Positions 27,617 through 43,147 of a stretch of 64,000 bases of DNA are shown here, piece by piece. Source of the DNA: Carpediemonas membranifera BICM (taxonomy: Eukaryota; Protista; Fornicata); contig JAHDYR010000066.1 in NCBI GenBank assembly GCA_019828565.1, positions 124,001 through 188,000 of the forward strand, read 5' to 3'. Made by a program: the position numbers and the translations under genes. Under the pieces are notes generated by a model, which was not told where the DNA came from, searched no databases, and saw only the letters and a program-made list of their open reading frames with translations. Each line of letters opens with the position of its first letter. Within the stretch, counting starts at the first letter, position 1.

Positions 27617-29110
27617 TGCACGGCAGTCATCCCCAAGACCCACCAACGATGGCCAACAACGATGTGTTGAATGCTGTTGCGTGCATAGATGAGTTCTTGC
27701 GTGGTATTGATGCTGCTAATTGTGCCGATGAGGCATCTATGTTGGTGGTGGCACGGATTCAGCGTCTCTACGAGCACCCATGCCTTCATCGCGAGCTTCC
27801 AACCGACAGAAAGAAGGCACTACTTAACGCTTATCGAGTTTCTACTACCGTGGCACGTAGCATCCCGGGCGATGTTACATCTGCCCTTGCCCGTGCCTAC
27901 CGTGCTGAGCTTGGTGAGGACATCGCCTCGCATGAGGACGCACTCGATGACTTGACTAAGGCGATGCAGGCTATCCCACCGCTCTGCACTGACGCTAAGG
28001 TACACATGGGGCGGGCCTGGTCGCTGCTGGCCTCGCCCACGCTAAGCATGGACATCCCATTGAAGGTGGGGGAGAGCCTGCCCGATACGGTATACACCCT
28101 GCTGCAGGGCACGATCTGGTCGATCCTCATGGCTTCTGGGGCGTCACCCGAGCTTGACGGACGGGGACCGGTGTCACTGAAGCTCCCCTGGTTCCTATGC
28201 AGGAAGTTCTTGTTCGCTCACAGAATCGCCGAAAAGGACGGCGTTGTAGCGTACAGGTCGATCAGAAACTCCTTTCGCCTCTACGCGGGCCGTCTGTTCA
28301 CGCGACACGAGATCGTCGGTGCCAACCGGGCCACCTTTACCCGCGTCTGTGCCCCGCCGACCGTGGAGATACACAGCGACGGCCTCGCCAACATAGCAGT
28401 GACAGCCAAGGGCCTATACGGCTGGGGTTCTAACGACGAGGACGTGCTGGGTCTCGCCAGTGCAGTGGTCGCGACCCCCAGCCGCATCCCGTTCCACCGC
28501 TGTCCAGAAGTCGACCGATACGAGCGGTCCCTGCCGCCGTGGGGCAAGGACCGCCTCGTGCTTGGGATGCACCTCAGCTTCTGCCAATCGTTCATCCATA
28601 CACCCGTTGGCATCGTCGTCGCGGGTACTTTCCAGGATTGTTTCTCTGACGGTGTCCACGCCGGGTTTACGGGCTTTCTACCAGTCCTCCTGCCCCCGGG
28701 CTTTGTCCCAGACACGATGATGGTGTCGTATGGCATGCTGCTCGTCCTGCGGCAGCCAGCAGTTCATCGGCGGACTCAACGACTTTGGCCAGCTCGGCAT
28801 TGACGCCATCGACGATGATGACGCCCAGCCGGACTTCTTCCGGCCCATGACATTCCCGGTCGACCGCGTACTGACGTCGAACCAGCATGGCTACGCGATA
28901 TTCGTCAGTGGCCGCCGGCTGATGTTCGCAGGCCTCGTGCCCCCCAGCCTGCATGGCCAACCCTTCTTTGGCCGCATAATCGCCGAGGACGAAGAGTAAG
29001 AGAACAGTCTAAATTCATCCCGGGGGGTTGACAGCCTAAGCCTTCTTTACATGAACCCCCAGTAAATACCTCTAAACGCTACACTTGTTTGTATTGATCC
29101 TTATCCTGCA
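27617..29110 (+). mobile_element. Putative non-autonomous element related to the Fanzor element, carrying an RCC1-like gene; right end uncertain (about 29081-29110)
   Basis: Starts with TGCACGGCAGT (identical to 35570-35580). Contains the approx. 65-bp module 29014-29081, similar to 38050-38119. Confidence 0.55.
27649..28999 (+). CDS. RCC1/BLIP-II-like repeat protein; frameshift near 28745
   Basis: GLYGWGSNDEDVLGL..TPSRIPF, then in the next frame FIGGLNDFGQLGI (RCC1 repeat cores). A 2-nt loss at GTC(TC)CTGC would join the frames. Confidence 0.6.
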
Positions 29111-33343: not shown

Positions 33344-34684
33344 TTAAAGATCCGAGAAGAACGATGCCCGCTTTTGGGCAAGCACGTCGAACTTGCGGCT
33401 CTTACCACGCTTCTTCCGCTTCCTATAGACCTCCTCCTCCTCCTCCTCCGAGTCGGACCCGTCCTCAGTGGCCACGCCCTCGCCGTCCCCCTCAGCATCA
33501 TCAGCCTTCTCGTCTCCCCCAGCATCCTCCTCGGCCTCGACGGCATCGTCGTCGATAGCCAGCAGCCCGGCGTCGCTGTCGGACGCGTCGCTGTAGTCCC
33601 GCACGGTGGGCTTGGCCTCCGCCATGACCAGCATCAGGTCGATCACCCACACGCCCCTGCTGTTCAGCACGGCGAGCAGGCCGTCCGCCGCCCGGTGCAC
33701 GGCATCGAACCCGGCAGCCTCGTCCTCAAGCATAATCCGGTCGACGACGAACGCCTTCTTGACGAGAGACCCGACGACGACGTTGGAGTCCGTAGCGACC
33801 ACCAGCCCGCAGTCAGCCACAGCGATGCTCCTCACAGCCCACTGGAGGGGGATCTGTGTGGGCCGGTACGTGTGGCCGTACTGGTAAGGGTCGTGGGTCG
33901 CGTTCTCCCGCACACAGGCCCGACGCCGGTCCGCAAGGTCGATGGAGCTGGCGATGAGCTTGGAGAGGTTGAATGTGTAAATGTTCCCGGCCGTGTCGGT
34001 TTCGATGGTGCCGACGATGAAGCGCTTGCTGTCGAGCCTGGTGATGCACGTAACGTCTTGGTCCAGGAAGCAGAATGGCGTGTACCGCTTCATACTCACG
34101 ATGACATCGGACTTCCTCTTGATGCTGAGCGGCGTGATGGCGCCGTTGTTGGACACGGTGACGACGGTCTGCCGGCCGTGCGCCCCATCGACCAGGAGCA
34201 TGTCGTTCACCTCGTCCTCGTTCTCACTGTTGTCCACAGTGCACACAACAGTCACCTTAGGGCCATCCACGGCGTAGAGCACGAACTCCCCCTGCTCGTC
34301 GCCCGTGACGAAGCAATCGTCCGTAACCCAGCAGGTCGTCGAGACTGGCTCCTCGACAGTGGTGGCCCAGACCCGTCTGAGGACAGGGGAGCCATCCTTC
34401 GTTGTCCGCTCGAGAAGGTGGAGGGTCTTTCTGGCACAGGCCAGGATGCGGGTCCTGTTGGGCGAAACACGGACGTGATGGATAATATGAATGGGCGCAG
34501 AGCCTTCAGCTTCACTCTTCTTGCCAATATTCATGGCGCATTCGTCCACAAACTCGTCCCACGGGCTATACACAACTACTTCACCAAGGATATTGCCCGT
34601 GACGAGCATTTCCTCGTCAATAGCAAGATCACTGGCGGTAATAGCAGCAAACCCGTCGTTTGAGAAGGTCAGTGCTGGCTCCAT
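33344..34684 (-). CDS. WDR55: WD40-like protein, WDR55/JIP5-like
   Basis: Beta-propeller-like blades (LVTGNILGEVVVY, FVTGDEQGEFVLY), acidic/basic tail ending SFFSDL. Confidence 0.6.
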   Translation of the reverse strand: MEPALTFSNDGFAAITASDLAIDEEMLVTGNILGEVVVYSPWDEFVDECAMNIGKKSEAEGSAPIHIIHHVRVSPNRTRILACARKTLHLLERTTKDGSPVLRRVWATTVEEPVSTTCWVTDDCFVTGDEQGEFVLYAVDGPKVTVVCTVDNSENEDEVNDMLLVDGAHGRQTVVTVSNNGAITPLSIKRKSDVIVSMKRYTPFCFLDQDVTCITRLDSKRFIVGTIETDTAGNIYTFNLSKLIASSIDLADRRRACVRENATHDPYQYGHTYRPTQIPLQWAVRSIAVADCGLVVATDSNVVVGSLVKKAFVVDRIMLEDEAAGFDAVHRAADGLLAVLNSRGVWVIDLMLVMAEAKPTVRDYSDASDSDAGLLAIDDDAVEAEEDAGGDEKADDAEGDGEGVATEDGSDSEEEEEEVYRKRKKRGKSRKFDVLAQKRASFFSDL

Positions 34685-34734
34685 CAGTCTTGATTGTGCA
34701 CACGCCCAACTGGCTTCTTGGTGCAGTTTATGTG

Positions 34735-34845
34735 CGTCTGTTACGCGCTCATCTGTCGTCCATTGCCGGCGTTTGAAGCTCATGTCGTCGTCGTCTTCGT
34801 CATCTTCGTACTTCGGACTCAGTAATTCTAATCCTGCGCGGCACA
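34735..34845 (+). mobile_element. 111-bp mini-derivative of the Fanzor element
   Basis: 34735-34810 is the reverse complement of 37725-37793. 34815-34845 is the reverse complement of the 31-bp module at 35586-35616 and 37933-37963. Confidence 0.65.
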
Positions 34846-34962
34846 CTGTGATGGGGCGCTGCTAGGGTCGAATGGCGCAGCTGAGCGCATTCCTGGTCCT
34901 CAACAGGGCATTTGGGCATCTCTTTACACTTTTTGCGCAGATCTGACAATACAATCGACGAG

Positions 34963-35481
34963 ATGGTAAAGACTCTCATAGTCCTCGGGAGCGGTGGGCA
35001 TACGGCTGAAATGATGCATCTGCTCACACAAGTTGATACTGATGATATTGCACCCAGATACTATGTACACGCCGACAGCGACGCCCAATCTTCTCAGAAG
35101 GCCGTATCGTTTGAGGAGAAGAACGGCGGGAAAGACTATATTATCAAATCGATTCCTCGCGCTCGATCTGTAGGTCAGAGCTACTTTACTAGCATTTTTA
35201 CGACGCTCTACGCCTTCATCTTCGCCTTTGTCTTGATTCTGAGGATACGACCGAAGCTGCTCCTCACAGACGGCCCGGGCACGGCCCTGCCACTCGTCTA
35301 CTCCGCCTTCTTCCTCCGTTTCATCGGCCAGCGCTGCCGGATAATCTTTGTCGAGTCGTTCTGCCGCGTCGAGTCACTTTCGTTGGCAGGGAGGCTCTGC
35401 AAACCTGTTGTCGACCGATTCATCGTGCACTGGCCGTCCCTGAAGACCCAGGGCGAGTATGTCCCGGGCCTGTTGTTCTGA
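34963..35481 (+). CDS. ALG14: UDP-GlcNAc transferase subunit ALG14
   Basis: IVLGSGGHTAEM..IPRARSVGQSYFTS..TDGPGTALP..IFVESFCRVESLSLAG..DRFIVHWP. Confidence 0.95.
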   Translation: MVKTLIVLGSGGHTAEMMHLLTQVDTDDIAPRYYVHADSDAQSSQKAVSFEEKNGGKDYIIKSIPRARSVGQSYFTSIFTTLYAFIFAFVLILRIRPKLLLTDGPGTALPLVYSAFFLRFIGQRCRIIFVESFCRVESLSLAGRLCKPVVDRFIVHWPSLKTQGEYVPGLLF

Positions 35482-35549
35482 GCCTTTGGAGCCCCGGGAT
35501 TGGTCAGAAAGAGGTCCGTTGTTGTAGGTAAATGGGCATAGGCGCGTAT

Positions 35550-35727
35550 GGTCGACTGGTATGCTCTGTTGCACGGCAGTACAGCTGTGCCGCGCAGGAT
35601 AAGAATACTTGAGTCCAAAACACAGTGATCCAAGCAGCATCAGGATCGCAGTGTGGTTCATCATACTCTATCAATCGTGCGCAGCATATCACGCGCGCTG
35701 CAGCGCGTGCTGGCTCAACTTGGCAAG
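35550..35727 (-). ncRNA. Candidate Fanzor omegaRNA: scaffold about 35727 to 35570, guide about 35569 to 35550
   Basis: Directly 3' of the ORF. Hairpins CAGCA-CGCGCTGCAGCGCG-..TGCTG, GATCC..GGATC, and GCGCGGCA-cagctgtac-TGCCGTGC ending at the shared terminus. Confidence 0.55.
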
Positions 35728-37567
35728 TTAATGATAGCGAGGAAGAGCACCTCTCTGGGAGTCGTAGTGGAAAGGAGATTGCACTATCTGATCTGAAGTT
35801 GCATCGAAGGTGCACCAAAGGATGTTCTCGCTGGCGCTCTTATCTCGGTGAGAGAGATTGAGAAGTATGTCTCTCTCTGCTCGGGATGCCGACGTAGCCG
35901 TTCAACGCGCCATGGAGCTCCCTCGCACGCGGGATTCTGGCAGAGCATGGTGCGGTGTGTGTGCACCACACGTCTGAAGTGTGCTTTGCAGTATGGGCAC
36001 ACGATGGAAGTGCGGAATTCCGAGACCATCGTGACAGTCACGACGACGTTGTGCCGGAGCATGATGCCAGGAAGAGCCCGAGCAAAGTGGCGGTACGGAG
36101 CACAGGAGGGAGTACCGGCGGAACCAAACAGTGCAGCCCCATACGCGACTTCGAGGTGAATGGGCTCCGGGGGGCGCCCGCCGAGATCATCCAGGAGTTG
36201 ACGTCCAGCCCGGGCGAAGTGCTTCTGGCGCAGACAGTGATTGGCAAAAGTCGCACGGCGGAAACACTTTCTCGTCCCCTCGTTGATGATCTGAACGATG
36301 TTCTCATGGACAAACCTAATCGACTGTTTGAGAGCCTCTAGACTTGTCGTTTTGAACGATGCTGCGCTCATATTCACGCGGAAAGAGGGGGTGGCAGTGT
36401 AGCCGCCCAGCGACCGAGCACCAGGGTCGAAGCCCATGAGAGCTTGAATGTCCGGGGCAGGAGTAGCCTCGGCGTCGTCCTGACCGAGCCGAGCCCGCTT
36501 GTTGCTGCTACCTTTTTGTACGTGGGCCGGTCAGCCACCCGACCGCCACGGTATTTCTCGCGACCCACCCAAACCGTCACAGCAACAGAGACCCCGTCAG
36601 TCTTCACAGAGAGCACTCTGCGGAGCTTGGTGATGTCGCCGTGATCACGCTCGTATTCAGCCACCTGCTCGTCGGTCAAATTCTTGGTTGCTGACCAATT
36701 CACGTGCACACGCAGGCGCCTCTTCATCGCTGGGGTGAGCGCTGTTACTCCGCGCTCGAGGGTCATGAACCCAGGCCTGACCGGTGCCATCGGAATGAGC
36801 TTCGGCTCTGGCAGGGCCTGACTGAGCTCGAGGTTCACGGCACGAGTGAGTGTGACCAGCTTGGTCACTGCAGCACTCATGCGCGTGACGCACGACAGCA
36901 CGCCGACGAGGGCCTCGGCCACGGTACCAGTGCGACCCACCCGTTGCCCCTCGGGCGATGCATGCATTTGAGGATGATACCTGTCATGATCGGCGGCTAT
37001 GGCGGCAACCTCAGTGTCGAGCTCGCCTAGGGTGTCGAGAAAATCCTGTCGAACACCCGGCTGATCATGGAGGAGCGGACGCACCCGTTCTAATCCAGCA
37101 CGAAGACGGGTCAGGTACCCGGGTGACGCGCGCGAGAGCCTGACCCGGGTGGCTGTGGAGTACTCGCCCAACCAGGTGTCAAATGGCTTGCACAAGCCAA
37201 GGTAGCTATAAGCCGTGACGAAGTCCTGGACGAGTGGGGTTATGTCAGGGTCCCTCCACATCGCCAGGTCGCCAATCCACCTGCACCGATCCGCTGCCTT
37301 TGCCTTCGACACCTTTTGCTGAGCAATGCTGACGATCTGCTTGAGGACCTCCTGGTCGAACAGGTTGACCATCCTCGGTGGGGTCAACGCGTGCGCAGAT
37401 GCAGAGACGCACGCAAGCAGGCAAGTGAATGTGTACTTAGCCTGCGTGAAAGAACGCATGCCGGGTTCAAGATTTCCTCGCCGCGGCGCGTTGTTATCGC
37501 CTCCACCGTTAATCTCGCAAATGGCCTTGTTAACGGAAGCCTTCACCGTGTATATCTTGGAAGGCAT
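35728..37567 (-). CDS. Fanzor (Fanzor1-like, TnpB family) RNA-guided endonuclease; about 613 aa after repairing two -1 frameshifts
   Basis: SVKTDGVSVAV, RuvC-I MGFDPG, VAYGAALFG, RuvC-II VSEFRTS, Zn finger CPYC..CQNPAC. RuvC-III HRDKSASENI (35821-35850) sits in the shifted frame. Stop TAA at 35728-35730. Confidence 0.88.
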
Positions 37568-37721
37568 TGGAGTCTATTGAGCTGCCTGCATCGATCATTT
37601 CTTTTCAGGGTTCATCAGCTGGCAGCATCCCTCAAAACACAAGAAACCAGCATCATACAACACAAAGCGTCTTTACTACCAGCTACAACCGCTTTCCACC
37701 ACTAGTGTCTCTCTCTCACAA

Positions 37722-37905
37722 CAGACGAAGATGACGACGACGACATGAGCTTCAGACGCCAGCAATGGACGACAGATGAGCGCGTAACAGACGAGCACAG
37801 ACGCGAAAGAAGACAGCAGCGTTCGACACAGACGATGGACGACAGACGACGCATCTTTTCGTGCAGACCGACGACTGAAAGCACGACAGCCCGATGGTAC
37901 AGACG
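37722..37905 (+). repeat. Cluster of seven CAGACG direct repeats
   Basis: CAGACG at 37722, 37753, 37788, 37798, 37829, 37843 and 37900. Confidence 0.75.
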
Positions 37906-38136
37906 AGGGCTGAAGTGGGTGAGTGGAGGTAGTGTGCTGCGCAGGATTAGAATTGTTGAGTCTAAACAATCGCCGACGCCCTCATGTCCGCTACCCTTCT
38001 GGTGTACGACAGGTGGGATGTCAGACTGAACCTGTTCAGCCCTCTGGAGTTCATCCCAGGGGGGTCGACAGCTTAAGTCACCTTTACATGAATCCTCCAC
38101 ATAAACCTCAAAATCTCTAATACAATACCACAACAG

Positions 38137-38228
38137 TGATGCATTCAAATCCCCTAGTTTGGACCATTTACACCACCACGGGTCTAAACCTCCTCAGTAA
38201 ACACATTGTTTGACCCTTCAATAGCACA
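38137..38228 (+). repeat. 5' LTR (92 bp)
   Basis: TGATGCATTC..AATAGCACA, identical to 42691-42782. Confidence 0.96.
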
Positions 38229-38241
38229 GTAATTACTACGC

Positions 38242-41200
38242 ATGAAGAAGGATGACGATGACGACGACCCAAAAGGGACTTACCCGAAGTATCTCCGGCA
38301 CACTGCAGCCGACTGGGTGAGGTTCCGCATGAGCTACGCACTCTATGCTGAAGATGAGGTCAAGCCGAAGACCCTCTTCGAGTGCATCGACGCGAAAGTG
38401 AGAACAAGTATCAAGGACGCATACCAAGCTCTGGAGGACGACGAAAGCTCCGATGACAGCTCTGACAGCTCGAGTGAAGACGACGAGGAGATGTTCAGCG
38501 CCAACGAGGGTAGCGACAGCAGCAGGGGCGGCGAAGACGCGCACGCCCAGAGCGACTCCGAGGATGACGCCCGGAGCACACTCATCGCTAACCCGGCCCG
38601 GAAGAAGAAGACAAGCGGCAAGACGACCGCCCGGGACGACGCTTTGCTCCGGTACATCATGGCTCAAGACCAAGAGAAGAAGGAGGCGAAGACAACGAGG
38701 AGGAAGCGCGATGAGCGCTGGGTGGTGATGGCTGAGGCCACACTAACCAATATCAGTCTTCAGCGCGCGTACCGCGAGCTTCGCAAGCTCCGTGAGACCT
38801 CTTTCACCCGTTACCGCCATGTGTTCACGGATATGGTAGATCTGTTCGAGAAGGTCGGATCCCTGGATGCTAGAGAGCTCCAGGAGATCGTTCTGGCGAG
38901 CCTCGATGACGAGACGATCGCATCGTCTCTTCGCTCTGTTGTTCTTTCCAAGTCAACAGTCGCGAAGTCGTTGAAGGTCATAGCAAAGTACCTACGGGCC
39001 CGAACAGATGCCATGCGAGAGTTTGACCTGGTGCCGAGCAGCCGGCTCGCGGCCCTACAGAAGCAGCTCGAGTCACTGCAGAGCAAGCCGAGAGAGGAGC
39101 GGAAGATGCCAGCGAGGACGGGAGAGCGCAGACGCAATGACGGCGCGGCCGAGGGGGCCAAGCCTGAGCGGCGGCAAGTGGGCCGCGGCTGCTTCAACTG
39201 CGGCGAAAAGGGTCACGACTCGGCCGACTGCCCACACGAGGAGCCGAAGTGCTTCAGGTGCGGCGAGTTCGGCCACAAGTCGCACCAGTGCACAGTTGTA
39301 AAGCCATCTGAGTATCCTTTCTGTTTTATGTTAGCGTCCAAGACTATCTGGCAGGAGAAGGCCAGTCTGCTGGGCGAAGAGTTGATCGTCCGCATGGACA
39401 CCTGCTCCTCGTTCAGCGTCGTGCCGAGGGACTGGGCCGTCGAGAAGGGACTGAAGATCGCCACGCGGGGCGAGACAGTCCGCTTGGCTGACGAGTCGAT
39501 GAGGAGGGTCTACCGAGTGTTGTCAGATGTGCCGATCACCCTCCACCTCGACAGAGAGGTCACCGCGACGCCGACCTGGTATGCGATGGACAAGGCCGAG
39601 TCGTTCCTCATCAACATGGAGGTGATTGACTCCCTCGGCCTAATCAACCGCAACCTTGACACCGAAGCAGACCCCATCCAGGTCATCTCCAAGCTCACAG
39701 AGGACTGGGCCGAGAGATACAGCGACTGCTTCGGCGATGCAGGCGAACCAGCAGACCTTAAGCCGTTCAAGGTCACGCTGAAGAAGGACGCCCGACCCTA
39801 CTTCCGTCTGCCCCGAAGGTTCCCAAGACAGGTGGAGGATGAACTCCGGTCAGAGATGCAGAAGCTGGAGGAAAGCGGGATCATCATCCCAACCAAGTCT
39901 CCCTGGAGCAGCTCAGTGGTCATGGTGCGGAAGAAGGCCGGGACGTGGCGGCCGTGCATGGACTACTCGCCACTGAACGAGCTCCTGGCGTCCATGACTC
40001 AGCACGACTTGCCGTCGACGGAAGAGCTGATCGAGAGGCTGAGGGGCAACAAGTACTTCGCAGCACTTGACCTCAGCAAGGCCTTCCATCAGGTCCCGGT
40101 GCACCCCGACACACAGGAGTACCTGGCGTTCACGTACTCCAAGGGGCACTATACCTACACTACGATGCCGTTCGGCCTTGCCACCGCGGCTGGCCATATG
40201 CAAGAGGCCTTAGAGGAGGCTTTCGCGGACATGCTGGGCACGGCGTGTCTTGTGTACGTGGACGACATCATCGTCTATGGGTCGACCTGGGAAGAGTACC
40301 AGGCGAACCTGATGCGGGTGATGGACCGGGTGCGAGAGAAGAAGCTGAAGCTCAACAAGAACAAGTGCTTTTTTCGGGTTGACGGAGGTGGAGTACCTCG
40401 GATGGATAGTGTCGGCGGAAGGAAAGCGCATCCCCCATGGCGCGTCCAGGGTGTCCAGGAGCTGCCCGACCCGACAAACGTGAGTGACGTCAGGTCCACA
40501 TTGGGCATCTTCAACTTCTTCTCCCAGTTCATCCCCGGCTACGCGGACATCACCGAGCCGATCCGCAAGCTGGAGATCAAGGGCCAGACGTTCGTGTGGG
40601 GCGACCCCCAGAGAGAGGCGTTCAAGAGACTGAAGAAGATCGTCACCTCCCCCACACTGTTGGTCACACCGGGCCCTGACGACCGCCTACAGCTGTTCAC
40701 CGACGCGTCCGACACCGGTGTCGGCGCAGTGCTGGTCAGAGTCGAGGACGACGGGTCGAAGCGACCTGTGATGTTCTTCTCCAAGGCCCTGACAGCAAGC
40801 CAGCGCAAGTGGAGCACCTACCGCAAGGAGGCATTCGCCATCATAGCGGCCACGAGGAAGATGAGACGGTTCCTAGCCACAAGGGAGTTTGAGATGTTCA
40901 CGGACCACCGTAACCTCGTGTACACGTGGGGCAACGTCGACCCCATGGTGCAGCGCTGGGCACTTGAGCTGGGCAACCTCAAGTTCAGCATCACCCACGT
41001 GCCTGGTAAGTCTAATACGGTCGCGGACGGCCTGTCCAGAATGCCCCGCGCAGAAGCCGAGAGCCTGACACCAGAGCAGCAGGGTGCGATCGTGTCCGTG
41101 ATGTGTGCAGTCGACGCAGCGGAGGAAGAGTCGGAAGAAGTCGCCGCCGACGAGCCGAGAGTTCGGTTCCGCGAAGAGGCGGCAGGACAGCCTGACCGCG

Positions 41201-42664
41201 AGCGCGACGAGGCAGACGAAAGCGACACCGAGGAAGCAGCCGGGACAGACGAGGGCGACACCCTTGACGCCGAGCCCGAAGAGGAGGGCACGTTCCCGGC
41301 CATACCCGAGTCCCAGAAGCTGCCACGCTTCAAGTCCGTTCACGGACCTGGCACCGGTCACCACGGGGTTGACCAGACGCTGTGGAAGCTCGAGGATAAG
41401 GGATTGCGCTGGGACACTGCGGACACGGACGTCCAGAGGATGGTTAAGGAGTGCCCCGTGTGCCAGAAGAACGCCGAACACCGGTCACGCGAGCAATATC
41501 AGGAGCAGCTGCGCATGCCAGCGTCGCCGTTCAGTCGCGTGTTCGCCGACACCATCAACATGGCAGAGGCAGACCAGGGTTACCGGTACATCCTGGTGCT
41601 GGTGGAGGAGTCGACGAGGTGGGTCACCCTGTGCCCACTGAAGACGGTGACCTCCGCCGCCACCATCAGAGCAATCAGGGAAAGATACCTCACACACTTC
41701 CCGCCCCCCGGTCGAGTGGGTGACCGATAGCGGACGGCAGTTCGACTCGAAGGAGTTCAAGTCGTTCGCGGCAGAGCTAGGCGGGGGCGCGAAGACGACC
41801 ACCCCGTACCATCACGAGGAGAATGGGATCGTTGAGCGCAGGAATCGCGAAGTGAACCGCCACCTCAGGGACGAGATGCATCAGCGCGGCACGAAGCAAT
41901 GGATGGGCCTACTGCCAGCGGTTCAGAACATCATCAACCAGGCTAGATCTGCCACGACAGGCACGTCACCCTGGAAGCTAGTGGTGTCCACAGAGCGGGA
42001 AGGGAAGATGACACTGTCGAACCAGGAGAGAGCCGACGTTACGGACGTCATTGACAAGATGGTCCGGAACGAGAAGATGAGAGCTCAACAGCGCAGGGAC
42101 GCGGCGAAGAAGACGTACGACGCGGCCAAGGCCAGACAGGACAAGCACAACAAGAGGACACCGACCCGTATCACAGCCAAGGCGTGGGTCATGGTCGACA
42201 GGGATGCAGAACAGAGAGGGAAGTACCAGCTACGATGGAGAGGCCCACTTCAGGTGGTCAAGAAGGCACCTGGAAACGCCAGCTCGTTCGTGATAAGGGA
42301 CCCCGAGACGAACAAGACGTATAAGAAGCACGTGAAGCATCTGAAGCTCGCAGAAGGCGACTGGGATGAGGAGAAGGCGAAGGCAGAATGCGCCAAGGAC
42401 CGTATGCACACGTATATCAAAGAGATCGTCACGCACAGGATCAAGAAGGACGTGATGAAGACGCCAGAGGTGAAGGTGCGCTGGTTAGGATACGAACCAG
42501 CAGACGACACGTGGAGAAACCCAACAGACGAGGATATGAGAGGCAATGCGATACTTCAGCAGTACCTGCAGGTGAATACACCCCTAGAGGAAGCCATGAA
42601 GCGGTTTGATGATTTGAAGCTCAGAATGTCGGCCCGCCAATCAAATGGCACTCGGCAGGATTAG
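38242..42664 (+). CDS. Gag-Pol polyprotein with homopolymer frameshifts (40369-40436 compensated; 41718-41720)
   Basis: Two CCHC knuckles, protease MDTCSS, RT YVDDII, RNase H TDASD..TDH..ADGLSR, integrase HH-CC plus D/TDSG/ER, chromodomain VKVRWLGYEPADDTW. Confidence 0.93.
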
Positions 42665-42690
42665 ACATCGCATTGAAGGAGGGGGGGTAG

Positions 42691-42782
42691 TGATGCATTC
42701 AAATCCCCTAGTTTGGACCATTTACACCACCACGGGTCTAAACCTCCTCAGTAAACACATTGTTTGACCCTTCAATAGCACA
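42691..42782 (+). repeat. 3' LTR (92 bp)
   Basis: Preceded by the polypurine tract GAAGGAGGGGGGG and followed by the TSD. Confidence 0.96.
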
Positions 42783-42829
42783 AACAGCGATGTACAAAAC
42801 TGCGCCGAGATTCAAAAGGAGGAGGAACC

Positions 42830-43147
42830 ATGCATTCCGCCGCCCCACTGACCCATGAAGAGTTCTATGAGCTAGTTGTTATGCTTAATGGCATGCGCGG
42901 TCAGATGAGGATCGTCGCCTTCTCCTATTGGGCCTTTTTGACGGGCAAGACAGCAGATGAAGTGAAAGCCGAGGGGCAATTGGAAATTGACCCAACAAAG
43001 GTCCCTATTGCAACTCAGCGGAAGTTTTATGAGAAGCTTAAGAAGATGCAGGAGGGGCTTGCCCGAGTTCAACAGATCAACATCGAGAAGGACAGCCTTG
43101 AGCTCGAGATCGCGCACAAGCAGACTCATAAGCGGAATAACGACTGA
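42830..43147 (+). CDS. Small stand-alone ET/NET (BET extra-terminal)-like domain protein
   Basis: PLTHEEFYELVVMLNGM..QLEIDPTKVPIATQRKF parallels ET PMSYDEKRQLSLDINKL..EIEIDFETLKPSTLREL. Confidence 0.55.
   Translation: MHSAAPLTHEEFYELVVMLNGMRGQMRIVAFSYWAFLTGKTADEVKAEGQLEIDPTKVPIATQRKFYEKLKKMQEGLARVQQINIEKDSLELEIAHKQTHKRNND

What the first reader, a model, noticed from the sequence alone, without database searches (positions are those of the whole stretch)
35728..37567. Hidden Fanzor (eukaryotic RNA-guided TnpB-family nuclease) with a complete RuvC triad
Seen: the ORF track splits the gene. Adding one base in the T5 run at 36513-36517 gives ..TYKKGSSNKRARLGQDD..ALMGFDPG (KRARL is NLS-like). 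Adding one C near 35850 brings in HRDKSASENILWC. The reconstructed protein of about 613 aa has TDGVSV, GFDPG (RuvC-I D), AYGAALFG, SEFRTS (RuvC-II E), CPYC/CQNPAC and RD (RuvC-III D). Known: this motif order defines TnpB/Fanzor, with TDGVS and AYG typical of Fanzor1. Inference: a catalytically intact Fanzor in an anaerobic flagellate that automated annotation would miss. Its long N-terminal part resembles nothing I recognise.
Basis: partly seen in the sequence, partly recalled or inferred. Interest (0 to 1): 0.93.

Follow-up and report, generated by a model that had tools for sequence, protein, structure and literature searches.

The report
Decayed Fanzor gene in retroelement-like carrier
This is a broken copy of a Fanzor-type (TnpB-like, probably RNA-guided) nuclease gene of Carpediemonas membranifera. 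It belongs to a family of over 100 copies whose carriers carry the insertion marks of the genome's Ty3/gypsy retrotransposons, an association not reported for Fanzors.

Summary
The homology to Fanzor is real. A profile of Carpediemonas paralogues matches a Fanzor1-like family (hhalign 98%, E 6e-14), and that family matches the solved Spizellomyces Fanzor (E 6e-21). ESM Atlas structure matches cover residues 9-635, so the N-terminal part is ordinary Fanzor architecture.

The window copy is not intact. Against a natural 642-aa intact paralogue on contig C18 it has:
- a 1-bp loss at 36511-36512;
- a 2-bp AG gain at about 35877, not a missing C at 35850;
- a 9-bp deletion;
- a 57-bp deletion that removes 19 residues just after the RuvC-I aspartate.

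The genome holds more than 100 copies in three families, and the scan's first readers noted Fanzor-like genes on other pieces of this genome. Pairwise dN/dS is about 0.5.

The main finding is the carrier (35586-38132). It has TG..CA ends, 5-bp target duplications and 30-41-nt terminal direct repeats. A polypurine-like tract lies on the strand antisense to Fanzor. Insertion is about 10 nt from a promoter-like motif, the same spot and orientation as the neighbouring chromovirus. One sister family shares that chromovirus's polypurine tract and LTR ends. An RNA intermediate is not shown.

The parts
35581..35585 (.). Target-site duplication, first copy (ACAGC on the plus strand)
   Evidence: It matches ACAG at 38133-38136 plus C at 42788 once the later chromovirus insertion is removed.
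35586..35624 (-). Outer terminal repeat, the right end in Fanzor sense. The plus strand starts TGTGCC.
   Evidence: A sharp homology end in about 45 copies. It is a direct repeat of 37933-37962. Adaptor-tagged cDNA contigs start here at about 35601 and 35611.
35625..35727 (-). 3' untranslated stretch in Fanzor sense, the candidate omegaRNA region (not shown)
   Evidence: Conserved among copies. Folding z-score is -0.63 in sense and -1.74 in antisense on the paralogue, so there is no structural signal.
35728..35868 (-). C-terminal coding piece with RuvC-III (HRD at 35842-35850) and the stop codon
   Evidence: The intact paralogue has the same tail.
35869..35878 (-). AG run holding a 2-bp insertion (second frameshift)
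   Evidence: Laid contigs lack these 2 nt, but they are paralogue versions.
35879..36510 (-). Middle coding piece: RuvC-I GFDPG, the G-for-E strand AYGAALFG, the alternative glutamate in SEFRTS, and the zinc finger CPYC/CQNPAC
36404..36405 (-). Junction of the in-frame 57-bp deletion (19 residues after RuvC-I)
   Evidence: Residues 401-419 of the intact protein form strands 2 and 3 of the model.
36511..36517 (-). GG + A5 run with a 1-bp loss (first frameshift)
   Evidence: Laid contigs carry the extra C after 36510.
36518..37567 (-). N-terminal coding piece (helical lobe, the PKLIP..PVRPGFM block, TDGVSV). It has a 9-bp deletion at 36793/36794.
   Evidence: hhalign aligns from residue 260. Atlas structure matches start at residue 9.
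37568..37906 (-). 5' untranslated stretch in Fanzor sense, including a short repeat array
37907..37932 (+). Purine-rich, polypurine-tract-like run ending GGTAG, next to the inner repeat
   Evidence: The chromovirus has an equivalent tract at 42672-42690.
37933..37966 (+). Inner terminal repeat (same 30 nt as the outer one) plus TAAA
37967..38132 (+). Variable 'B' segment and constant end (ends ..CCACA on the plus strand). This is the left end in Fanzor sense.
   Evidence: Its length varies from 0 to about 480 nt between copies, always truncated on the inner side.
38133..38136 (.). Second copy of the carrier's target duplication, split by the chromovirus. Its last base is 42788.
38137..42782 (+). 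Younger chromovirus (Ty3/gypsy with chromodomain). It has 92-nt identical LTRs and TSD AACAG, and it is inserted 1 nt inside the carrier's end.
42796..42807 (+). Promoter-like host motif (CAAAACTGCGCC), 22 nt before the ATG at 42830. It is the shared target landmark.

Best explanation
The locus is a decayed copy of a Fanzor1-like gene of Carpediemonas membranifera. The intact form is a 642-aa protein with a helical N-terminal lobe, a WED-like block, and a split RuvC domain with D392, E547 and D605. Glycine sits at the canonical RuvC-II place, and a CxxC..CxxxxC zinc finger is present. By homology it should be a guide-RNA-dependent double-strand DNA endonuclease. This step is inferred: no guide RNA and no activity were seen.

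The window copy cannot make that protein. It has two frameshifts, which may or may not be assembly errors. It also lacks 19 residues of the RuvC sheet.

The gene rides, in antisense orientation, in a 2.5-kb non-autonomous carrier. The carrier's ends, 5-bp target duplication, polypurine-like tract and promoter-proximal target match the resident chromoviruses. The carriers are therefore most likely inserted by a chromoviral integrase supplied in trans (inferred). They probably pass through a cDNA made by irregular strand transfers (more weakly inferred).

Purifying selection on the ORF suggests the nuclease helps the carrier spread. One possibility is cutting unoccupied alleles so that repair copies the element. 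That last step is speculation.
For: Organism: (KAG9392617.1).

Motifs and frames.

Copy number and the intact paralogue.

Lesions.

Homology:
- The Carpediemonas profile finds PF07282 proteins among 1.8e9 representatives at E 2.8e-8 and 1.3e-6.
- hhalign gives 97-98%, E 2.5e-11 and 5.6e-14, over 309 columns.
- That partner family hits SpuFz 8GKH at 5.9e-21.
- The combined profile hits Fanzor1, Fanzor2, Cas12f and TnpB.
- Foldseek top hits are all Cas12f, Fanzor or RuvC.
- Atlas features score 0.98 and structure matches reach TM 0.59-0.64 over residues 9-635.
- The rearranged glutamate fits Jiang 2023, PMC10530073.

Selection: dN/dS is 0.53 overall and falls to 0.48 as dS rises.

Carrier:
- Sharp ends.
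- 13 of 20 copies have a perfect 5-bp TSD and 3 more match 4 of 5.
- The target motif is in 19 of 27 flanks against 1.3% of controls.
- The chromovirus is inserted at the same spot and in the same orientation.
- All three Fanzor families share the anatomy.
- Family 3's tract and ends align with the chromovirus polypurine tract and LTR.

Transcription: probable RNA runs hold family contigs with poly(A) and adaptor ends.
Against: - No Pfam or PDB hit for the protein on its own. The link is transitive, through one intermediate family.
- AlphaFold models are weak, with pLDDT 44 and 57.
- No omegaRNA was found, and folding z-scores are not significant.
- The flank positions next to the target duplication show no strong TAM-like consensus.
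- The two terminal repeats of one copy are no more alike than repeats of different copies, 27.7 against 27.5 of 30. Their last 11-18 nt also differ in a heritable way. Classical LTR regeneration is therefore not supported.
- No tRNA-type primer-binding site was seen.
- No autonomous element with the ends of the window's own family was found near pol hits.
- The reads could not settle the frameshifts.
Confidence: 0.8

Rival explanations
1. One reading: a functional, catalytically intact Fanzor at this very locus, hidden only by two sequencing or assembly indels.
For: Both frameshifts lie in run contexts, GGG beside A5 and an AG run. Every laid contig over these places shows the unshifted version. 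The copy is close to the intact paralogue, with dS 0.023 and dN/dS 0.76.
Against: The laid contigs are high-depth paralogue paths, and contigs drop rare variants, so they prove nothing about this copy. Independently of the shifts, a 57-bp deletion removes residues 401-419, two strands of the RuvC sheet. There is also a 9-bp deletion, and a TAG closes the upstream start.
Confidence: 0.07
2. The carrier is an ordinary DNA transposon (cut-and-paste, for example with an integrase-like Ginger-type transposase), as for all published Fanzors. On this view the likeness to the chromovirus is convergence or shared target preference.
For: Terminal repeats are not homogenised within copies. The two ends keep their own distinct last 11-18 nt. 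Published Fanzor carriers are DNA transposons.
Against: There are no terminal inverted repeats beyond TGTG/CACA, and no transposase gene in or near the copies. A purine-rich tract ending GGTAG abuts the inner repeat in all three families, as in the chromovirus. Family 3 shares the last 33 nt and the start of the chromovirus LTR. The insertion site and orientation are the same. The junctions of the B segment carry variable filler, as template switches do.
Confidence: 0.2
3. The motifs are a chance match or belong to another zinc-finger nuclease family that is not TnpB/Fanzor.
For: The single protein gives no Pfam or PDB hit.
Against: all converge on TnpB, Cas12f and Fanzor, with all five motif blocks aligned in order.
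Confidence: 0.02

Closest known systems
Fanzor1 (for example Spizellomyces punctatus SpuFz1, PDB 8GKH; Saito 2023 PMC10432273)
   Same: Same motif order: TDG block, G-DPG RuvC-I, G in place of the canonical RuvC-II glutamate, the glutamate in the EF-TS motif before CxxC, a second Cys pair, and RD-NA--NI RuvC-III. Length is about 640 aa with a helical N-terminal lobe. Both are multi-copy in the genome.
   Different: Very divergent, detectable only by profile-profile comparison or structure. There is an insertion of about 20 residues between the zinc finger and RuvC-III. The carrier has direct terminal repeats with 5-bp TSDs, not 30-nt inverted repeats. No omegaRNA is known.
Fanzor-type proteins with PF26935 (DUF8286) + PF07282, found by the Atlas mainly in Nucleocytoviricota (giant viruses)
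   Same: They are the best ESM Atlas matches by features (0.98) and by structure (TM 0.59-0.64 over residues 9-635) and have a similar length, 600-700 aa.
   Different: Their host context is viral or unknown. Sequence identity is low, and no kinship closer than family level was tested.
TnpB with rearranged catalytic site ('TnpB2', for example Thermoplasma volcanium TvTnpB; Jiang 2023 PMC10530073)
   Same: The same relocation of the RuvC-II glutamate. Here it lies 40 residues downstream, against about 45 in the paper.
   Different: TnpB2 is prokaryotic, about 400 aa, and sits in IS605 with TnpA. There the guide comes from the right end and the TAM from the left-end flank.
Non-autonomous LTR retrotransposons (LARD, TRIM, TR-GAG) and retroviral transduction of cellular genes
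   Same: TG..CA ends, a 5-bp TSD, a polypurine-like tract, ends shared with an autonomous chromovirus (family 3), no pol of their own, and cargo in the internal region.
   Different: The terminal repeats are only 30-41 nt. They differ in their last 11-18 nt and are not homogenised within a copy. One end carries a variably truncated extra segment. The cargo is an antisense nuclease gene.
Target-specific LTR retrotransposons (Ty3 at Pol III starts, Tf1 at Pol II promoters, chromoviruses)
   Same: Position- and orientation-specific insertion a fixed distance from a transcription landmark.
   Different: The landmark here is a 12-nt motif (consensus GTGCAGTTTAWG on the flank strand), 10-12 nt from the insertion. 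The tethering factor is unknown.

Membership tests
TnpB/Fanzor superfamily | RuvC-I aspartate in a G-x-D-x-G strand | tested here: met
   GFDPG at 36420-36434. D392 is invariant in 7 paralogues and aligned to GIDPG of the partner family.
TnpB/Fanzor superfamily | RuvC-II glutamate. Fanzor type: canonical place holds G/P, with an alternative E about 45 residues downstream before the zinc finger. | tested here: met
   AYGAALFG has G507, and E547 lies in SEFRTS. The criterion is from PMC10530073.
TnpB/Fanzor superfamily | TNB zinc finger (two Cys pairs) between RuvC-II and RuvC-III | tested here: met
   CPYC and CQNPAC, with the four Cys invariant. Pfam PF07282 reaches only E 0.09, below its cut-off. 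The profile matches Cas12f TNB.
TnpB/Fanzor superfamily | RuvC-III aspartate in an RD-NA--NI motif | tested here: met
   HRDKSASENIL at 35812-35850, in a third frame in the window and in frame in the intact paralogue as D605.
TnpB/Fanzor superfamily | Significant sequence homology to experimentally validated members | tested here: met
   Transitive: A1 against A4 gives 98.2%, E 5.6e-14, and A4 against SpuFz 8GKH gives E 5.9e-21. Direct single-sequence searches were blank.
TnpB/Fanzor superfamily | RNase H-like RuvC fold with an inserted zinc finger | tested here: inconclusive
   My model is weak, pLDDT 57.5, yet all top Foldseek hits are Cas12f, Fanzor, TnpB or RuvC with probability about 1 and TM 0.27-0.34. 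The Atlas model gives TM 0.59-0.64 to PF07282/PF26935 clusters.
TnpB/Fanzor superfamily | Cognate omegaRNA from the 3' end of the gene and the right end | tested here: inconclusive
   The 3' stretch is conserved, but its folding energy is not better than shuffles. No small-RNA data were available.
TnpB/Fanzor superfamily | RNA-guided DNA cleavage | not testable with these tools
   Needs biochemistry.
Functional ('catalytically intact') Fanzor at this locus | Uninterrupted ORF with a complete RuvC core | tested here: not met
   Two frameshifts and 9-bp and 57-bp deletions, with residues 401-419 lost.
LTR retrotransposon (non-autonomous) | TG..CA termini and a 4-6-bp target-site duplication | tested here: met
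   13 of 20 copies have a perfect 5-bp TSD. The window has ACAGC. Families 2 and 3 show the same.
LTR retrotransposon (non-autonomous) | Two long terminal direct repeats identical at insertion | tested here: not met
   The repeats share only about 30 nt. Within-copy identity equals between-copy identity, and the ends differ heritably.
LTR retrotransposon (non-autonomous) | Polypurine tract abutting the 3' repeat | tested here: met
   Purine content is 77-92% over 24-26 nt, ending GGTAG, GGTAA or GGCAG, in all three families and in the chromovirus.
LTR retrotransposon (non-autonomous) | Primer-binding site complementary to a tRNA 3' end | tested here: not met
   No TGG-type site follows the 5' repeat. 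The autonomous chromovirus lacks one too.
LTR retrotransposon (non-autonomous) | Ends homologous to an autonomous partner | tested here: inconclusive
   Met for family 3 against the window chromovirus. Not found for the window copy's own family 1.
LTR retrotransposon (non-autonomous) | RNA intermediate | not testable with these tools
   Only hints: adaptor-tagged cDNA ends inside the outer repeat on the plus strand, and filler at the B junctions.

The most novel reading that the evidence does not exclude
Fanzor nuclease genes in Carpediemonas are cargo of chromovirus-derived, integrase-inserted retroelements that land a fixed 10-12 nt from gene promoters. The gene lies antisense to the element's RNA. 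Each round of copying takes one end from a co-packaged helper RNA, which would explain the variable B segment and the unmatched repeats. This would be the first retrotransposon-borne Fanzor. It would show that an RNA-guided nuclease can be kept under selection in an element that never excises.
Probability: 0.4. Interest if true: 0.85.

Novelty: new variant of a known kind. Interest (0 to 1): 0.7.

Why it matters
Fanzors are the only known eukaryotic RNA-guided DNA nucleases. So far they are tied to DNA transposons and giant viruses. [quoted passage not shown]

This genome bears on that statement in three ways:
- It is from a metamonad, a group not mentioned with Fanzor in the searched literature. 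It holds more than 100 copies of a very divergent Fanzor1-like gene under purifying selection.
- The carriers bear the marks of chromoviral integration at promoters.
- If this holds, the accepted rationale for TnpB/Fanzor (restoring an excised transposon) cannot be the whole story, and the system offers a natural test case.

The finding also documents a precise promoter-proximal integration target in this organism, and a natural intact protein that can be assayed.

Tried and rejected
- Pfam and PDB searches with the single proteins were blank, or gave only PF07282 at E 0.09.
- The full-length AlphaFold model from a 15-sequence alignment had pLDDT 44 and was unusable.
- Read check of the indels: only Logan contigs were on offer. 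They show the paralogue versions at both shift sites and cannot speak for this copy.
- A 19-nt leader on RNA contigs looked like a spliced leader. It is absent from the genome and joins at sites without AG, so I read it as a library adaptor.
- OmegaRNA by folding energy gave no signal on either strand.
- Classical LTR replication is rejected, because the repeats of one copy are not more alike than those of different copies.
- The search for an autonomous partner of family 1 failed. There is no pol in the fetched loci. The tail motif is not placed beside pol hits.
- I tested whether the B segment is a pol C-terminus. It holds a 96-aa ORF with no Pfam match and no likeness to the chromovirus pol.
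All protein work used the natural intact paralogue by reference.
- A Fanzor1/Fanzor2/TnpB tree was not made, because no named reference sequences could be handed to the tools.
Full report
**What is there**

The window is contig C65:124001-188000 of a 24.2-Mb genome. One encoded paralogue is KAG9392617.1 of Carpediemonas membranifera.

On the minus strand an ATG at 37567 opens a frame that runs to about 36517. A second frame carries KRARL, GFDPG, AYGAALFG, SEFRTS, CPYC and CQNPAC. A third frame carries HRDKSASENILWC and ends at 35728-35730.

**Copy number and the state of this copy**

Searching the genome with the two halves gave more than 150 and more than 120 matches. These fall into three families with about 45-50% protein identity to each other.

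Among the fetched copies of the window's family, one has an uninterrupted 642-aa ORF (L033:658-2583, minus strand, on C18).

DNA alignment of the window to that copy is 96-97% identical from 37966 to 35579. It shows four lesions in the window:
- One G is lost from a GGG run beside the A5 run (36511-36512).
- Two bases (AG) are gained in an AG run at about 35869-35878.
- There is an in-frame 9-bp deletion at 36793/36794.
- There is an in-frame 57-bp deletion at 36404/36405, between 8-bp direct repeats.

The 57-bp deletion removes residues 401-419. In the model these are the two strands that follow the RuvC-I strand. A TAG also closes the upstream start codon that the intact copy uses.

Public runs were available only as Logan contigs. 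Those lying over the two shift sites carry the unshifted, high-depth paralogue versions. They can neither confirm nor deny the window's version. Even if both shifts were assembly errors, the copy would lack part of the RuvC sheet.

All protein work used the natural intact paralogue.

**Is it a Fanzor?**

Single-sequence searches fail. Pfam gives nothing for the intact protein and PF07282 at E 0.09 for the window ORF. PDB gives nothing.

A profile of seven Carpediemonas paralogues (A1) was searched against 1.84 billion representatives. Besides 30 fragments from the same genome, it found five outside proteins, the best two at E 2.8e-8 and 1.3e-6. All five match PF07282, three of them above its cut-off.

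Profile-profile comparison of A1 with the family of one of them (A4, eight proteins carrying PF26935 + PF07282) gives 98.2% probability and E 5.6e-14 over 309 columns. The alignment runs from the PKLVP..PVRPGFM block through TDG, RuvC-I, the G-for-E strand, the EF-TS glutamate, both Cys pairs and RuvC-III.

A4 alone matches the solved Spizellomyces Fanzor at E 5.9e-21 over 366 residues. It also matches mimivirus Fanzor2 and Guillardia Fanzor1. The combined profile adds Parasitella Fanzor1, Cas12f and TnpB.

The arrangement of glycine at the canonical RuvC-II place and a glutamate 40 residues downstream is the rearranged site described for Fanzors and a TnpB subset (PMC10530073).

My AlphaFold model of the C-terminal 343 residues is mediocre (pLDDT 57.5). 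Even so, all top Foldseek hits are Cas12f, SpuFz, Fanzor2, CasX, TnpB or RuvC.

The ESM Atlas holds the intact protein. Its nearest clusters by features (0.98) and by structure (TM 0.59-0.64, residues 9-635) are proteins of 600-700 aa with PF07282 and PF26935, mostly from giant viruses. The N-terminal part is therefore ordinary Fanzor architecture.

Pairwise dN/dS among 41 copies is 0.53. It falls from 0.79 in the closest pairs to 0.48 in the most distant. This pattern is expected if the ORF was under purifying selection while the family spread.

**The carrier**

Homology among copies stops sharply at both sides. In Fanzor sense the element begins TGTGG and ends GCACA.

Thirteen of 20 copies with both ends in hand have a perfect 5-bp target duplication, and three more match 4 of 5.

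In the window the element is 35586-38132, with the duplication ACAGC. Its second copy is split by a chromovirus (38137-42782). That chromovirus has 92-nt identical LTRs and its own duplication AACAG. It carries RT, RNase H, integrase zinc finger and chromodomain, and it inserted 1 nt inside the carrier's end.

The last 30 nt of the element recur as a direct repeat near the other end (37933-37962). On the plus strand, which is antisense to Fanzor, that inner repeat is preceded by a purine-rich run ending GGTAG. The chromovirus 3' LTR is preceded by such a run in the same way.

Families 2 and 3 have their own ends but the same anatomy: TG..CA, 5-bp duplications, 30-45-nt direct repeats and the purine tract antisense to Fanzor. 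In family 3 the tract, the repeat start and the last 33 nt align with the polypurine tract and LTR of the window chromovirus.

**Target site**

In 19 of 27 flanks a motif (consensus GTGCAGTTTAWG) ends 10 nt from the element, against 1.3% of control 32-mers. Read on the other strand, it lies 14-50 nt upstream of start codons of host genes. I read it as a core promoter element; this is an inference.

In the window it is at 42796-42807, 22 nt before the ATG at 42830. The chromovirus chose the same spot and orientation. The shared site, the shared end chemistry and the shared ends in one family argue that a chromoviral integrase inserts the carriers.

**What does not fit a textbook LTR element**

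- The two repeats of a copy share only about 30 nt. Their last 11-18 nt differ in a way inherited by all copies.
- Within-copy identity of the repeats (27.7 of 30) equals between-copy identity (27.5 of 30).
- Between the inner repeat and the promoter-side end lies a segment, which I call B, of 0 to about 480 nt. It is always complete at the outer end, truncated at variable points on the inner side, and joined through a few filler bases.
- The longest B versions contain a 96-aa ORF with no Pfam match.
- No tRNA-type primer site is present, in the carriers or in the chromovirus.

A model that would explain these facts is reverse transcription that starts on a co-packaged helper RNA and switches early to the carrier RNA. 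One end would then be renewed from the helper at each round. This is a hypothesis only.

Probable RNA runs contain family contigs. Adaptor-tagged ends lie inside the outer repeat on the plus strand, at about 35601 and 35611. The adaptor is absent from the genome.

**Guide RNA**

None was found. The 3' untranslated stretch is conserved, but its folding energy is no better than shuffles. The flank gives no clear TAM.

**Literature**

No paper in the library pairs Fanzor with Carpediemonas or Metamonada. Published carriers are DNA transposons. Ty3 elements near SpuFz loci were judged incidental. [quoted passage not shown]

First readers of this scan noted Fanzor-like genes on six other pieces of this genome. 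On this window they also noted the chromovirus, a mini-element and a sister element.

**Verdict**

The locus is a real but decayed Fanzor1-like gene. The family, its one intact copy and above all its retroelement-like carrier are the interesting part.

Noticed in passing
window 38137-42782: A very young chromovirus with 92-nt LTRs that are 100% identical and TSD AACAG. The polypurine tract ends GGGTAG, and only 13 nt separate the 5' LTR from the gag ATG. There is no tRNA-type primer site. The integrase is split between two frames at about 41725. Other genomic copies have open frames of 1476 aa.
   Followed up: partly
window 42796-42807 (+) and 34721-34732 (-); flanks of L013-L057: A 12-nt motif (CWTAAACTGCAC in gene sense) lies 14-50 nt upstream of start codons. 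It marks the integration site of both the carriers and the chromovirus, and is probably a core promoter or initiator element of this organism.
   Followed up: partly
window 34726-34847: A fragment of about 120 nt from a family-1 carrier (part of the 5' leader plus the 30-nt terminal repeat). It lies directly beside the promoter motif of the gene at 33344-34684 (minus strand).
   Followed up: partly
L013:322-609 (minus strand); truncated forms in most family-1 copies, for example window 37967-38090: The variable B segment of the carrier holds, in its longest versions, a complete 96-aa ORF with a hydrophobic stretch and no Pfam match. It lies on the strand opposite to Fanzor.
   Followed up: partly
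L051 and L047 flanks; left ends of L061, L064, L065, L070: A 43-nt mini repeat with TG..CA ends occurs alone with its own 5-bp duplications inside other carriers, like a solo LTR. It shares its last 33 nt with the chromovirus LTR.
   Followed up: partly
G000:C8:147705-158213: Eight tandem C-terminal Fanzor fragments with a period of about 1.67 kb. L048 shows two units sharing one repeat. Both are as expected from unequal recombination between the terminal repeats.
   Followed up: no
RNA-like runs X3 and X4 laid on window 35601, about 35611 and 37449: A constant 19-22-nt leader precedes different plus-strand positions in cDNA contigs. It has no match in the genome, so it is probably a library adaptor that marks cDNA ends. 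A poly(A) end at 35544 fits the ALG14 transcript.
   Followed up: partly
window 27617-29110: A stretch ending at about 29085 carries a variant of the carrier's promoter-side end module after an unrelated ORF. I could not confirm a left end or a target duplication.
   Followed up: partly
L064 and L065 (C65:304500-310000 and 327000-332500): Two family-3 copies lie in opposite orientation, 99.6% identical. The left flank of one equals the right flank of the other (CTCAC), which suggests an inversion by recombination between them.
   Followed up: no
window 34912-35481: An ALG14 homologue (Pfam E 2e-57) is the host gene on the other side of the carrier.
   Followed up: yes
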